A stretch of DNA of 64,000 nucleotides from Blepharisma stoltei ATCC 30299 (lineage: Eukaryota > Protista > Ciliophora), in the NCBI GenBank assembly GCA_965603825.1, contig CBFDEM010000027.1, forward strand, positions 248,001 to 312,000, written 5' to 3'. The notes beneath the pieces are model-generated. The model ran no database searches, was not told the origin of the DNA, and worked only from the letters and a program-made list of their open reading frames with translations. Both the position numbers and the translations under genes were made by a program. This document shows, one piece after another, positions 12,917 to 16,247 of this stretch. Every line of letters starts with the position of its first letter. Position 1 is the stretch's first letter.

Positions 12917-13916
12917 TTAACTATAATGCAAGTCTTGGGACTTTTTGAAGAAATAGCCACGCACAAAGAAAGCTATAGCTAAAAGTATTGTAATTCCGCC
13001 CACCACAATGTAAGCAATCCCCAAGAAATCGTTTCTTCCTCCGAGTGCATTTGCAGTTGATATCACTACGTACTTTTTCCCATCAAAATCTGACACGTCA
13101 TAAGTGCTATTAATTTGAACTGTATAAGTCCCCACTGTAAGGTCATCTTCTATCCTCCCCCACAATTTTCTGAAATTCGGCAGTCCAGAAACCCTCATCC
13201 ACACTATAAAATGCTCTACATAGGAATTTACCGTCTTCCACGTCTTTCCACTGCTTTTTCTGCCAATTTTTCAGATTTTTGAATTTCCTATCTTTATCTG
13301 AAGGCCAGGCAATGTCATTTTCTAAAATATTAACTCTGTGTCCGTTTTGGTCCCACATTATAAAAGTGTCATTAAAAAAGGTCTTCGCGATTAGCCCACA
13401 TGGGTTGGCTACATCTTTATCAGTCAAATCCCAGCCGCCTTCTCTATACTTCGGTTCAATCCCCAGGTCTTCCATCGTAACAATAGGGTCGCAATCTGTG
13501 CTTACCGAGCCTTTTGATAAATCATTTCCCATCAGCTGATTCTGTGATTTTGATTTTACATATCTTCGATGGTTTTGGTAAAAATTATCAAGTTCATAGT
13601 AAAAATACACTGTAGAGCTCATTTCATCAGTGACATCAAAGGTAATATTGCAGAGGCTCAGCCTGTCATATTTGGTTTTGTCGCATTCTCCCACGTTGTC
13701 ATACCGCTTACGGTGCTCAATGATTTCTAAAGAATAGGACAATAAAACGCTCCCTACAATTATAAAAATCGACCCTAAAGTGGTAAAAATAATTACAGCT
13801 GATTTAACTGTAGGGACTGGCTTGTAAGCTTTCATTGTCTGCTGGCGAAAAGGGGTGTTTCGAGGCTTGCGATTGTGCTGCTCTTCTCCTAAAGGAACTA
13901 CTTGTCCGTCTGCCAT
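12917..13916 (-). CDS. CDC50: CDC50/LEM3 P4-ATPase flippase beta subunit (2 exons)
   Basis: FRQQ, NFYQNHRRYVKS, PCGLIA..FNDTF, EHFIVWMR..LPNFRKLWG, LGGRNDFLG. Confidence 0.95.
13216..13231 (-). other. 16-nt intron GTAAATTCCTATGTAG
   Basis: Removal fixes the frameshift and restores conserved DEHFIVWMR. Confidence 0.92.
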
Positions 13917-13921
13917 TTTAA

Positions 13922-14482
13922 TTATGAATTAATTTGGTTATTTAAAGCTTGCAACGTTTCCAAGGTGGGAAAAAGAGACTTTGACTGTGAGGAAATCTGA
14001 GACATGACGTCTACGTAGTGAAGGATTTTTTTGTCTGTGCTTTCGATTTCGTGCTTGATTTTCTCAATTGCGCTGTCAATTTCTTCACAGGTAGGCAGTT
14101 TGTTGATAGCTCGGGCTTCTTCTTCATATTCAATTAAATTGGATCTTAAGGATTTTTCGTGGGAGTATTCTTCTTTTAAGGCTTGGATTTCTTGTTTGTA
14201 GCTGTCTATTTTGCTTTGTAAAGCATCTGTTTGTGAGATTAGATAGTTTCAGTCAGCATCATAGGAATAGTGGGACAATTCTCTTTTTTCTGCGATATAT
14301 TCGAGCTCTTTGATGCCTTCTTTTAAGTCGTTTAAGAGTTTTTCACTTTGGCTTGGATGAATATTTTTGAAATCAACTATGTGGCCGAGCTCTAAACATT
14401 TTATGGCAAAATTTCGTAATGCAGGACTTTCTTTGTAGAGGAGTCGATTTAGCAGAGCATCTTCTTCGTTTAATTTTTTCAT
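13922..14482 (-). CDS. Coiled-coil protein, THO complex subunit 7-like
   Basis: EEDALLNRLL N-terminus, EYEEEARAINKLP motif, 186 aa; TGA at 14249 read through. Confidence 0.6.
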
Positions 14483-14789
14483 TTTTATAATAATTTATTA
14501 TGTAGTAGGTGGCTTTGAATTTTGAAGGGCAATGAAAATGCAGTTAAAATTAACTTTTGTCTAATATTATAAAGCTAAAAAAGTTAAAAATGATGCTAAA
14601 TAACTTTCTAAAAATATTCAAAAAAATTCTTCTGTAAAATAGAGCATTTCTCTATTTTATCTTTGTAATATTTTAACAATCAGTGCTTTTCCCATATATA
14701 AAAGGAACTATAAAAAGATTCTGATGACTATGAAAATTATGTGGAGAAAATAAATATGAATAATAAGTCCATTCATATAATTTTTATTA

Positions 14790-16247
14790 ATGAATTTAAT
14801 AAGTTTAGGAGGTGAGCACACTGAAGAGGCTTGCATATACTGCAAAAAGGGTCCATCAACTGTTTTTGGTTTTTATTGTAAAGAAATGAGTGTAGAAAAC
14901 TACGAAAAATTAATGTTTAAAGGATATAGAAGATGAGGAGACATCTGCTATGTCCCAGTCCTAGAAAAGTCTTGCTGCAAGCTCATCTCTTTAAGATGCA
15001 ATACAATTTTATATAAGCCTAATAAGAGCCAAAAAAAAGTCCAAAAGAAATTTGCCCGCTATTTAAATGCAGTGAAAAAGCCAACGAAAATCAAACAAAG
15101 AATGCACGAAATATTGACTATTCCAAATGATTTAAAAGAAAAACTAAAAAATGCTGTGGAAGCTACTATCGAAGTATTGGGAATCAGTTTTGAAGATAAA
15201 TTATGCGTTATCAAAAGAAACTCACCCAATAGAAAAAAAAGATTTGGAGATTACTCTATAAGTTCTGCTATAACTGTTCATATAAAAGCAAAACAAAATG
15301 GACTAAATTTAAATCTATCTGATGTAACAGAATTATTGCAAAATTATTTTGAATTAGAAATAAACAATAGCAAATGAAGGATCTTTTCTGTTGAGAATGG
15401 ATTTATCAATTTACTTGAAAACGAAATTGAAGAGATTAAGCTTCTTGATGAGAATAAAAATGAAAATAAAATTTCAGCAATTCCCCATACTTATAAGCAC
15501 GAATTGGTTGATAGCGATTTTTCTCAAGAATCATATGAGCTATATAAAGAATACGTCAAGGCTGTGCATGGCGAGACACCAACTAACCTATCAATTGAGC
15601 ATTACACACAGACTGCATGTAAAACATCTTTAATAAAAGAGGAGCCATCTCATGAGTATCCTTATGGGTTAGGAAGCTTCCATATGCTTCATAAAATTGA
15701 TGGAATCTTAGTGGGTGTTAGCGTAATTGATATTCTCCCAAGCGGGGTTTCTGCAGTATATTTCTTTTATTCTTCAAAAATATCATTTTTGTCACCAGGG
15801 ATCTTTTCTATAATGAAGGAAATAGAATTCGTTCAAAATAATCTCTCTGAAAGATTTAAGTACTATTATTTGGGCTTTTATATTAATAATATCCAAAAAA
15901 TGAAGTATAAAGGGGAGTTTTATCCAAGTGAGCTGCTTTGTCCGAAAAAATTTGTATGAGTTCCTATTGAAAACTGTTTGGAAGACCAAAGCCATAACTT
16001 TTTAGAGCTTTCAAGCTGCTGCCCTTTAACAAGCTGCCTACCTAAGGATCAAGATATGGAATTTTCAAATGCTAATATCCTGTCTTTTATTAATGAAAAT
16101 GCAAAAATTTCGATCAATAGTACAATATATACTATTTCAAGCCTGGATCAAAATTTTAGGCAATCTGCTTTAGAAAAACTGACATTAGCTTTTTATTATA
16201 TAGGAAAGCATTTATTCAAAAAATTTACCTTTTCTTTCATAAATTAA
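14790..16247 (+). CDS. ATE1: Arginyl-tRNA--protein transferase
   Basis: CIYCK, GYRRWG, SCC, GSFHMLHKIDG, VIDILP, YYYLGFYI, KMKYK..F.PSELLCP; TGA at 14934, 15375, 15957. Confidence 0.93.

What the first reader, a model, noticed from the sequence alone, without database searches (positions are those of the whole stretch)
15132..15413. ATE1 carries an inserted arginyl-tRNA-synthetase N-terminal-like (tRNA-recognition) domain
Seen: between the ATE_N and ATE_C regions is a ~95-aa segment LKEKLKNAVEATI...KKRFGDYSISSAITV...DVTELLQNYF...IFSVENGFINL, spanning a TGA=Trp. Known: the ArgRS N-terminal Add1 domain (Pfam Arg_tRNA_synt_N) has an N-helix, an (F/H)GDY motif and a terminal GFIN, and it reads the tRNA-Arg D-loop. 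Inference: this arginyltransferase may have a dedicated tRNA-Arg-selecting module not described in yeast/animal ATE1. Plant ATE1s have an insert at a similar place that may be a diverged homolog.
Basis: partly seen in the sequence, partly recalled or inferred. Interest (0 to 1): 0.82.

Follow-up and report, generated by a model that had tools for sequence, protein, structure and literature searches.

The report
ArgRS tRNA-reading domain inside arginyltransferase ATE1
This ciliate-like arginyltransferase (ATE1) has, spliced into its catalytic fold, a folded domain derived from the part of arginyl-tRNA synthetase that reads the tRNA-Arg D-loop, which suggests how many protist ATE1s could pick out tRNA-Arg, a question the literature still calls open.

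Summary
Window 14790-16247 (+) is an intronless 485-aa ATE1 gene with three in-frame TGA=Trp codons and a TAA stop.

**Position.** Residues 109-212 (nt 15114-15425) lie between ATE_N and ATE_C. They form a confidently folded module flanked by two disordered linkers.

**Homology to the ArgRS N-terminal (Add1) domain:**
- Pfam PF03485 is the only hit: 20.7 bits here, against a cut-off of 21.5. Four orthologous inserts pass the cut-off.
- A profile of 23 ATE1 inserts finds human ArgRS in the PDB at E about 1e-5. All top five hits are ArgRS.
- The AlphaFold model (pLDDT 95.9) ranks six ArgRS chains first of 48,161, at Z 10.2-8.5. The next, unrelated chain is at Z 6.0.
- The best-conserved positions are FGDY and G(F/Y)IN, the ArgRS pocket for D-loop nucleotide 20.

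**Context.** The domain sits where human ATE1 has the loop that touches the tRNA D- and T-arms. A second paralogue in this genome and many protist ATE1s, including Naegleria, carry it. Yeast and animal ATE1s do not.

I found no paper describing it; a 2024 preprint calls this insertion "disordered". tRNA binding is inferred, not shown. Plants could not be tested.

The parts
14790..16247 (+). ATE1 coding sequence, 485 aa plus TAA stop, no intron; identical to database protein P0001
   Evidence: Pfam ATE_N 55 bits and ATE_C 123 bits; whole model matches solved ATE1 structures
14829..15038 (+). ATE_N region (residues 14-83), with Cys15-x-x-Cys18 and Cys62-Cys63
   Evidence: alignment
14934..14936 (+). 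In-frame TGA read as Trp49, in a 'GYRRWG' variant of the usual GWRR(C/S)G motif
15024..15068 (+). Basic helix (residues 79-93). It aligns with the human/yeast helix that binds the tRNA acceptor arm
   Evidence: secondary structure; alignment to human ATE1 23-104; role of the helix from PMC10115844 and PMC11283454
15081..15113 (+). Disordered N-side linker (residues 98-108, pLDDT below 50)
15114..15425 (+). ArgRS Add1-like domain (residues 109-212). Elements in full-length-model numbering: H113-130, E141-143, H146-152, E155-157, H159-169, H176-191, E196-202, E205-210
15243..15257 (+). FGDYS motif (residues 152-156). It aligns with the FGDYQ motif of cytosolic-type ArgRS; F36 and Q40 of that motif in E. 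coli contact nucleotide A20
   Evidence: alignments; conservation; residue roles from PMC8975779
15375..15377 (+). In-frame TGA read as Trp196, inside the Add1-like domain. W is conserved here in most orthologous inserts
15396..15410 (+). NGFIN motif (residues 203-207). It aligns with G-F82-I-N84 of E. coli ArgRS, where F82 stacks on A20 and N84 reads it
   Evidence: residue roles from PMC8975779
15426..15470 (+). Disordered C-side linker (residues 213-227, pLDDT below 50)
15528..15941 (+). ATE_C region (residues 247-384), the second half of the split GNAT fold
15957..15959 (+). In-frame TGA read as Trp390, in the conserved 'F/YVWVP' motif

Best explanation
The gene encodes an arginyl-tRNA--protein transferase. 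Its split GNAT fold carries, at the split point, a complete folded domain homologous to the N-terminal 'additional' (Add1, Pfam Arg_tRNA_synt_N) domain of arginyl-tRNA synthetase. [quoted passage not shown]

Proposed mechanism, inferred and not shown: the GNAT core holds the acceptor arm and the arginylated 3' end. The tethered Add1-like domain docks on the tRNA elbow and uses the same pocket as ArgRS (FGDY plus G-F/Y-I-N) to read the D-loop around position 20. This would add affinity and tRNA-Arg selectivity. The module appears to have been captured from a cytosolic-type (FGDYQ-bearing) ArgRS. It is shared by many protist ATE1s, whereas metazoans have a disordered tRNA-wrapping loop at the same site and yeasts a short loop.
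For: **Sequence.**
- PF03485 is the only Pfam family, other than ATE_N and ATE_C, matching this region of the window protein. It scores E 6.7e-4 and 20.7 bits on the insert alone, covering profile positions 3-83 of 85.
- 14 of 23 orthologous inserts hit PF03485, with best E 3.8e-6.
- Naegleria P0044 (21.6 bits), P0060 (23.1), P0061 (22.0) and P0010 (21.6) reach the 21.5-bit cut-off.
- An HMM of the 23 inserts searched against 177,635 PDB sequences returns ArgRS as all top five hits, with human cytoplasmic ArgRS at E 9e-6. FGDY aligns on FGDYQ and NGyIN on GPGFIN.
- hhalign against this genome's own ArgRS N-terminus gives probability 82% and E 1e-5.

**Structure.**
- The AF2 model of the insert has pLDDT 95.9.
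- Foldseek's top 17 PDB hits are all ArgRS N-domains, with TM by query 0.50-0.68.
- Exhaustive VIA-align ranks six ArgRS chains first of 48,161, at Z 10.2, 10.0, 9.8, 8.6, 8.5 and 8.5. The next chain is unrelated, at Z 6.0.
- The ESM Atlas's own, independent model and my model both have only PF03485-bearing clusters as neighbours, TM 0.63-0.77, apart from one ciliate ATE1 cluster.

**Selection.**
- The most conserved insert columns are G153 (19/23), Y155 (20/23), S/T156 (20/23), the aromatic or His at 205 (21/23), I/V/L206 (23/23) and N207 (16/23).
- These are the equivalents of the E. coli A20 pocket residues F36, Q40, F82 and N84 (PMC8975779).
- A second paralogue in the genome keeps the domain at 56% identity. 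That is as conserved as ATE_N (51%) and far more than the C-side linker (20%).

**Position.**
- P0001 residues 95-218 replace human ATE1 residues 105-262.
- That human loop has residues 203-268 ordering on the D- and T-arms in the ternary complex (PMC11283454).

**Substrate.** The genome's tRNA-Arg(UCU) and tRNA-Arg(CCU) have A at position 20.
Against: - No binding or activity data exist, and the domain's position relative to the tRNA could not be modelled with the tools at hand.
- The window protein itself falls 0.8 bit short of the Pfam cut-off.
- Gln40 of the ArgRS motif is Ser or Thr in the ATE1 inserts, and Asn207 is replaced in 7 of 23. The pocket may therefore not be A20-specific.
- tRNA-Arg(UCG) of this genome has U, not A, at position 20.
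- The insert is not basic overall: pI 6.8, with 14 K+R against 14 D+E.
- In yeast and mouse the acceptor arm alone suffices for arginyl transfer (PMC10115844, PMC11283454), so an elbow reader is not mechanistically required.
- In yeast ArgRS the Add1-D-loop contacts are dispensable (PMC8975779).
Confidence: 0.6

Rival explanations
1. The insert is a true homologue of the ArgRS Add1 domain but no longer reads tRNA-Arg. It would serve another role: docking to a protein partner such as ArgRS or a substrate, non-specific tRNA tethering, or gating of the substrate cleft, as has been proposed for the mammalian disordered region.
For: - Gln40 of the ArgRS pocket is replaced by Ser/Thr, and Asn207 varies in 7 of 23 inserts.
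- One tRNA-Arg isoacceptor here has U20.
- The domain is near neutral, pI 6.8.
- Yeast ArgRS shows that Add1-D-loop contacts can become dispensable (PMC8975779).
- The mouse insertion is modelled as also sampling the substrate cleft (PMC11370617).
Against: - The positions kept best across very divergent inserts are those of the nucleotide-20 pocket. A repurposed surface would not be expected to preserve them.
- The insertion site is the one from which the human enzyme reaches the D- and T-arms.
- No partner or other function is known for Add1 domains.
Confidence: 0.3
2. The resemblance to Add1 is convergent or due to chance: a small alpha/beta module that happens to carry FGDY-like and GFIN-like strings.
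For: - Single-sequence comparison with the PDB finds no ArgRS.
- The Foldseek E-values are modest, 0.008-0.36.
- The Pfam score of this one protein is under the cut-off.
Against: - Profile-level E of about 1e-5 against both the PDB and the genome's own ArgRS, with both motifs in register.
- ArgRS chains fill the top 17 Foldseek ranks and the top 6 exhaustive ranks, with a Z gap of 8.5 to 6.0.
- An independent ESM Atlas model gives the same answer.
Confidence: 0.03
3. The insert is an artefact of assembly or gene modelling, for example an unspliced intron or a chimeric contig.
For: The gene contains three TGA codons, which a standard-code gene caller would read as stops.
Against: - The frame is open throughout with TGA=Trp, and the Trp positions are conserved.
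- More than 30 orthologues from independent assemblies carry the same insert, as does a second paralogue in this genome.
- Contigs from four public runs cover 14817-16179 without any joint. One contig spans 15171-15500 with no difference.
Confidence: 0.02

Closest known systems
N-terminal 'additional' (Add1) domain of arginyl-tRNA synthetase (Pfam PF03485 Arg_tRNA_synt_N), especially the cytosolic FGDYQ type
   Same: - Same fold: Z 10.2 to human ArgRS 4q2t, 97 residues aligned, rmsd 3.0 A.
- Same order of secondary-structure elements.
- The FGDY and G-F/Y-I-N motifs are in register.
- In ArgRS these motifs form the pocket for D-loop nucleotide 20 (PMC8975779).
   Different: - It is an internal insertion in a GNAT-fold aminoacyl-transferase, tethered by two disordered linkers. 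It is not the N-terminus of a class I synthetase.
- Gln40 is Ser/Thr, and the small residue equivalent to Ala78 is Val, Thr or Ser.
- tRNA binding is untested.
Human/mouse ATE1 divergent loop ('alphaC-loop', the intrinsically disordered region) that wraps the tRNA
   Same: - Same insertion point, splitting the GNAT fold just after the acceptor-arm-binding helix: P0001 95-218 against human 105-262.
[quoted passage not shown]
   Different: - The mammalian element is disordered in the apo state and has no sequence or fold similarity to the insert.
- Here the element is a compact domain with pLDDT above 90.
Yeast ATE1 (S. cerevisiae, K. lactis)
   Same: Same ATE_N, GNAT and ATE_C core and the same Cys cluster.
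   Different: About 35 residues (125-159) stand where this protein has about 150. tRNA recognition is reported through the acceptor arm only (PMC10115844).
Other non-synthetase carriers of aaRS-derived tRNA-binding modules, e.g. actinobacterial 'ArgS-related anticodon-binding protein NrtL' (PF03485 + DALR_1)
   Same: An Add1 domain occurs outside a functional ArgRS. This cluster appears among the structural neighbours of the insert.
   Different: Those proteins are truncated synthetase paralogues. Here a single domain has been inserted into an unrelated enzyme that uses the synthetase's product.

Membership tests
Eukaryotic arginyl-tRNA--protein transferase (ATE1) | Pfam ATE_N (PF04376) above its gathering score | tested here: met
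   55.0 bits against a cut-off of 27, residues 14-83
Eukaryotic arginyl-tRNA--protein transferase (ATE1) | Pfam ATE_C (PF04377) above its gathering score | tested here: met
   123.1 bits against a cut-off of 25, residues 247-384
Eukaryotic arginyl-tRNA--protein transferase (ATE1) | N-terminal Cys cluster (CxxC plus CC) that binds the metal or Fe-S cofactor | tested here: met
   Cys15-Ile-Tyr-Cys18 and Cys62-Cys63, aligned with the conserved columns. The role of the cluster comes from PMC10115844.
Eukaryotic arginyl-tRNA--protein transferase (ATE1) | Overall fold of solved ATE1s (GNAT core plus N/C-terminal sheet) | tested here: met
   AF2 model with pLDDT 89.2. Foldseek gives human ATE1 8tzv at E 4e-29, and K. 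lactis and yeast ATE1 at E 1e-15 to 1e-20.
Eukaryotic arginyl-tRNA--protein transferase (ATE1) | Transfer of Arg from Arg-tRNA-Arg to N-terminal Asp/Glu | not testable with these tools
   Needs an enzyme assay
Arg_tRNA_synt_N / ArgRS Add1 domain (PF03485) | Pfam gathering score (21.5 bits) | tested here: inconclusive
   The window protein's insert scores 20.7 bits, E 6.7e-4. Orthologous inserts pass: P0060 23.1, P0061 22.0, P0044 (Naegleria) 21.6 and P0010 21.6 bits.
Arg_tRNA_synt_N / ArgRS Add1 domain (PF03485) | Profile-level sequence homology to ArgRS N-domains | tested here: met
   The HMM of 23 inserts against the PDB returns ArgRS as the top five hits, best E 9e-6. hhalign against the genome's own ArgRS gives E 1e-5, probability 82%.
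Arg_tRNA_synt_N / ArgRS Add1 domain (PF03485) | Add1 alpha/beta fold | tested here: met
   VIA-align Z 10.2-8.5 for six ArgRS chains, next unrelated chain Z 6.0. Foldseek's top 17 hits are all ArgRS. Atlas neighbours are all PF03485 carriers, TM 0.63-0.77.
Arg_tRNA_synt_N / ArgRS Add1 domain (PF03485) | D-loop (nucleotide 20) pocket residues: F and Q of FGDYQ, and the aromatic and Asn of G-F/Y-I-N | tested here: met
   F152, G153, D154, Y155, F205, I206 and N207 are present. Only Gln40 is changed, to Ser156. Residue roles come from PMC8975779.
Arg_tRNA_synt_N / ArgRS Add1 domain (PF03485) | Binds the D-loop/elbow of tRNA-Arg | not testable with these tools
   Needs binding assays or a structure of the complex
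Arginyl-tRNA synthetase (the enzyme) | Class I catalytic domain (tRNA-synt_1d) and DALR anticodon-binding domain following Add1 | tested here: not met
   Neither PF00750 nor PF05746 hits P0001. The flanks are ATE_N and ATE_C. The protein is therefore not an ArgRS; only the one domain is shared.

The most novel reading that the evidence does not exclude
The Add1-like module would be an ancient, possibly ancestral, part of eukaryotic ATE1 that gives the enzyme synthetase-like reading of the tRNA-Arg D-loop. Metazoans would then have replaced it with a disordered tRNA-wrapping loop, and yeasts would have lost it. The published view that this insertion is 'an intrinsically disordered region in most eukaryotes' would be wrong for a large share of eukaryotic diversity. 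ATE1 and ArgRS would select their shared tRNA with one and the same protein module.
Probability: 0.35. Interest if true: 0.85.

Novelty: new variant of a known kind. Interest (0 to 1): 0.77.

Why it matters
How ATE1 picks arginyl-tRNA-Arg out of the tRNA pool is described as unresolved in the structural papers on the yeast, human and mouse enzymes (PMC10115844; PMC11283454; PMC11370617).

A folded, synthetase-derived D-loop reader sits at exactly the site from which the human enzyme reaches the tRNA elbow. This gives a concrete, mutable hypothesis: delete the domain, mutate four pocket residues, or change nucleotide 20.

The finding also contradicts the generalisation that this insertion is disordered in most eukaryotes. 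It is a clear case of an aminoacyl-tRNA synthetase recognition module being reused by the enzyme that consumes the synthetase's product. It also offers a compact, well-folded ATE1 for structural work on tRNA complexes.

Tried and rejected
- **Pieces between TGA codons.** The 81-aa piece already gave PF03485 at E 0.022 but lacked the GFIN end. After one search returned the window's own protein as P0001, I used that id rather than any read-through reference.
- **Single-sequence phmmer of the insert against the PDB.** It gave only noise: Nup116 and RsgI2, at E above 0.07.
- **Six-frame scan of the genome with PF03485.** It found the two ArgRS genes but not the ATE1 inserts, which is a sensitivity limit of that first look.
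- **Two of the three word-index protein searches.** The alignment query and the ATE_C region query added almost nothing.
- **Supplements of the two Nature Communications papers.** They held no usable alignment.
- **Contig look-ups for two orthologues.** They gave metagenome records without an organism.
- **tRNA genes in the window.** There are none, so tRNA-Arg genes were taken from elsewhere in the genome.
- **Sequencing runs.** The runs found are only guessed to be RNA. therefore shows continuity of the insert, not proven transcription.
- **Docking.** Docking the model onto the solved human ATE1-tRNA complex was not possible, because model coordinates are not exposed to scripts.

Full report
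**The gene and the observation**

The window is about 31% G+C. Positions 14790-16247 on the + strand form one continuous reading frame if TGA is read as Trp. It ends at a TAA stop. The large protein library holds this exact 485-aa translation as P0001, with W at the three TGA codons at 14934, 15375 and 15957.

TGA=Trp is supported independently:
- The last TGA aligns with the almost invariant W of the 'VWVP' motif of ATE1s.
- The middle one aligns with W in most orthologues.
- A paralogue elsewhere in the genome has TGA at the W of the canonical GWRRCG motif.

The assembly is 41.46 Mb in 64 contigs. From that, the code and the base composition I take it for a heterotrich-ciliate-like (Blepharisma-like) macronuclear genome. 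This is my inference and is not needed for the argument.

Pfam places ATE_N at residues 14-83 (55 bits) and ATE_C at 247-384 (123 bits).

**Working around the stop codons**

The 81-aa piece before the TGA already gave Arg_tRNA_synt_N (PF03485) as its only Pfam hit, at E 0.022 over profile positions 2-52. From then on I used the database protein P0001 and parts of it by reference. No spliced model was needed.

**Sequence evidence for homology with the ArgRS N-terminal domain**

- Scanned alone, P0001:108-214 matches PF03485 over profile positions 3-83 of 85, at E 6.7e-4 and 20.7 bits. That is 0.8 bit under the curated cut-off.
- A search of 1.84 billion representative proteins with residues 50-195 found ATE1 homologues that align right through the insert. 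The word search added more.
- In a 24-sequence full-length alignment the insert forms a conserved block with a G-x-Y-(S/T) motif and an N-G-(F/Y/H)-I-N motif.
- Of the 23 inserts, 14 hit PF03485 on their own, with best E 3.8e-6. No other family is hit by more than two.
- Four inserts reach the cut-off: P0060 at 23.1 bits, P0061 at 22.0, Naegleria gruberi P0044 at 21.6 and P0010 at 21.6.
- A profile built from the 23 inserts and searched against all 177,635 distinct PDB sequences returns ArgRS as its five best hits. Human cytoplasmic ArgRS comes first at E 9e-6 to 1e-5. The alignments put FGDY on FGDYQ and NGyIN on GPGFIN.
- Profile-sequence hhalign against the N-terminus of this genome's own ArgRS (L001) gives E 1e-5 and probability 82%.
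- The solved human, S. cerevisiae and K. lactis ATE1 sequences are in that PDB set and are not hit, even at E 10.

**Structural evidence**

The full-length AlphaFold2 model, built from the 24-sequence alignment without templates, has mean pLDDT 89.2. Residues 109-212 form a confident module with pLDDT above 90. It is flanked by two segments with pLDDT below 50, at 98-108 and 213-227. As a whole the model matches solved ATE1s, with human 8tzv at E 4e-29.

Modelled alone, the insert reaches pLDDT 95.9 and pTM 0.88. Searches with that model gave:
- **Foldseek against the PDB:** 17 ArgRS chains from bacteria, archaea and eukaryotes come first. TM by query is 0.50-0.68 and rmsd 2.4-4.4 A over about 100 columns.
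- **Exhaustive VIA-align against 48,161 representative chains:** six ArgRS chains come first, at Z 10.2, 10.0, 9.8, 8.6, 8.5 and 8.5. Each aligns through its first 90-100 residues. The next chain, at Z 6.0, is unrelated.
- **ESM Atlas shape search with my model:** only PF03485-bearing clusters are returned.
- **The Atlas's own model of the protein, which is independent of mine:** ArgRS clusters are the nearest neighbours of residues 108-214, at TM 0.63-0.77, together with one ciliate ATE1 cluster.

I consider homology with the Add1 domain established, at about 0.95.

**What is conserved, and why it points to the tRNA D-loop**

In E. coli ArgRS the identity nucleotide A20 is held by F36 and Q40 of the FGDYQ motif, by A78 and N84, and by stacking on F82. 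N79 of T. thermophilus is the equivalent Asn. These roles are summarised in PMC8975779.

In register with these residues, the window protein has F152, G153, D154, Y155, S156, V201, F205, I206 and N207. Across the 23 very divergent inserts (mean column identity 28%), the best-kept columns are:

| Position in P0001 | Residue kept | Inserts (of 23) |
|---|---|---|
| 153 | G | 19 |
| 155 | Y | 20 |
| 156 | S or T | 20 |
| 205 | aromatic or His | 21 |
| 206 | I, V or L | 23 |
| 207 | N | 16 |

Selection has therefore preserved the surface that binds nucleotide 20 in the synthetase.

A second ATE1 paralogue in the same genome lies at G000 C23 (locus L053). It is 487 aa and 53% identical overall, and it has the same insert, with FGNYS and KGFIN. 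Identity between the two copies by region is 56% in the domain, 51% in ATE_N, 66% in the GNAT/ATE_C core and 20% in the C-side linker.

**Position in the enzyme**

P0001 residues 14-94 align with human ATE1-2 residues 23-104, and 219-400 align with 263-446. Residues 95-218 therefore stand exactly in place of human 105-262. In yeast only about 35 residues (125-159) occupy this site.

The helix just before the site binds the acceptor-arm major groove in the yeast and human complexes (PMC10115844; PMC11283454). [quoted passage not shown] Deleting residues 191-220 lowers RNA affinity two- to four-fold.

The Add1-like domain is thus tethered by linkers of 11 and 15 or more disordered residues at the very point from which another ATE1 reaches the tRNA elbow. 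It seems sterically plausible that it can reach the elbow, but I could not model this.

**The substrate in this genome**

Of the tRNA-Arg genes I recovered, tRNA-Arg(UCU) (at least four gene copies) and tRNA-Arg(CCU) have the D-loop AACGGAUA, that is, A20. tRNA-Arg(UCG) has AACGGUA, that is, U20. An A20-specific reader would therefore fit the major AGR-decoding species but not every isoacceptor.

This variation, together with Ser/Thr in place of Gln40 and the variable Asn207, is the main reason I keep the functional claim at about 0.6.

**Distribution**

The insert profile detects the domain in more than 30 distinct ATE1s that were not all used to build it. Carriers include:
- both paralogues in this genome;
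- a ciliate cluster in the ESM Atlas;
- Naegleria gruberi;
- by family profile only, the aphelid Amoeboaphelidium.

Most other carriers are unnamed sequences from metagenomes or transcriptomes.

Animal sequences (Trichinella, a thrips, human) have a long basic, low-complexity region instead. Some unnamed ATE1s have only a short linker.

Carriers in Alveolata, Discoba and perhaps Opisthokonta suggest an old acquisition. Without a named, broad sample this remains a hypothesis.

The profile's preference for human cytosolic ArgRS (29 bits) over Plasmodium (15 bits) and enterobacterial ArgRS (13.5 bits), together with the FGDY motif, hints at a cytosolic-type ArgRS as donor. This is a weak inference.

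**Continuity of the insert in independent data**

Contigs from four public runs of one study lie only within 14817-16179, inside the coding region. They show no joint. One contig spans 15171-15500 without a difference. The runs are only guessed to be RNA, so this shows that the insert is not an assembly artefact. It is merely compatible with an unspliced mRNA.

**Literature**

No paper in the searchable library combines ATE1 or arginyltransferase with Add1, PF03485 or Arg_tRNA_synt_N.
[quoted passage not shown] Within what I could search, the folded synthetase-derived domain is undescribed. I cannot exclude that automatic superfamily annotations (Gene3D, SUPERFAMILY) already flag it on some database entries.

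**Verdict**

The homology claim is strongly supported by sequence profiles and by two independent structure predictions. The tRNA-Arg-selecting role is a well-motivated but untested inference. I rate it as a new variant of a known enzyme family, of high interest to people working on arginylation and on tRNA recognition.

Noticed in passing
L053 (G000 C23:68462-71875), minus strand, about 1201-2664: A second ATE1 paralogue: 487 aa with TGA=Trp and 53% identical to the window copy. It has the canonical GWRRCG motif (W encoded by TGA) and the same Add1-like insert, with FGNYS and KGFIN.
   Followed up: partly
window 14925-14942: The window's ATE1 has 'GYRRWG' where nearly all ATE1s have GWRR(C/S)G. 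The conserved Trp is Tyr, and a TGA-encoded Trp sits at the usual Cys/Ser position. The paralogue is canonical, so the window copy may be the more derived of the two.
   Followed up: no
L001 (G000 C40:474089-477349), ORF 28-1782 minus: The genome's main ArgRS (584 aa, no TGA codon) has 'KFKTDFISP' in place of the FGDYQ motif, although it keeps GNGFLN. In that motif the ATE1 insert is more synthetase-like than the organism's own synthetase.
   Followed up: no
L002 (G000 C4:176995-180249), ORFs 1132-1776 and 445-1080 minus: An ArgRS-like paralogue split by in-frame TGA. Its N-domain matches PF03485 only weakly (24.6 bits). By eye, the stretch where the HIGH signature should be looks degenerate. 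It may be an organellar ArgRS or a pseudo-enzyme.
   Followed up: no
L008 1501-1572 (-), L014 1501-1573 (+), L046 20-92 (+): The tRNA-Arg isoacceptors differ at D-loop position 20. UCU and CCU have A20 (loop AACGGAUA), while UCG has U20 (loop AACGGUA).
   Followed up: partly
window 13143-14482, minus strand: The neighbouring gene on the opposite strand ends, at its start codon, about 300 bp upstream of the ATE1 start. The short AT-rich spacer 14483-14789 presumably holds both promoters. I did not examine it.
   Followed up: no
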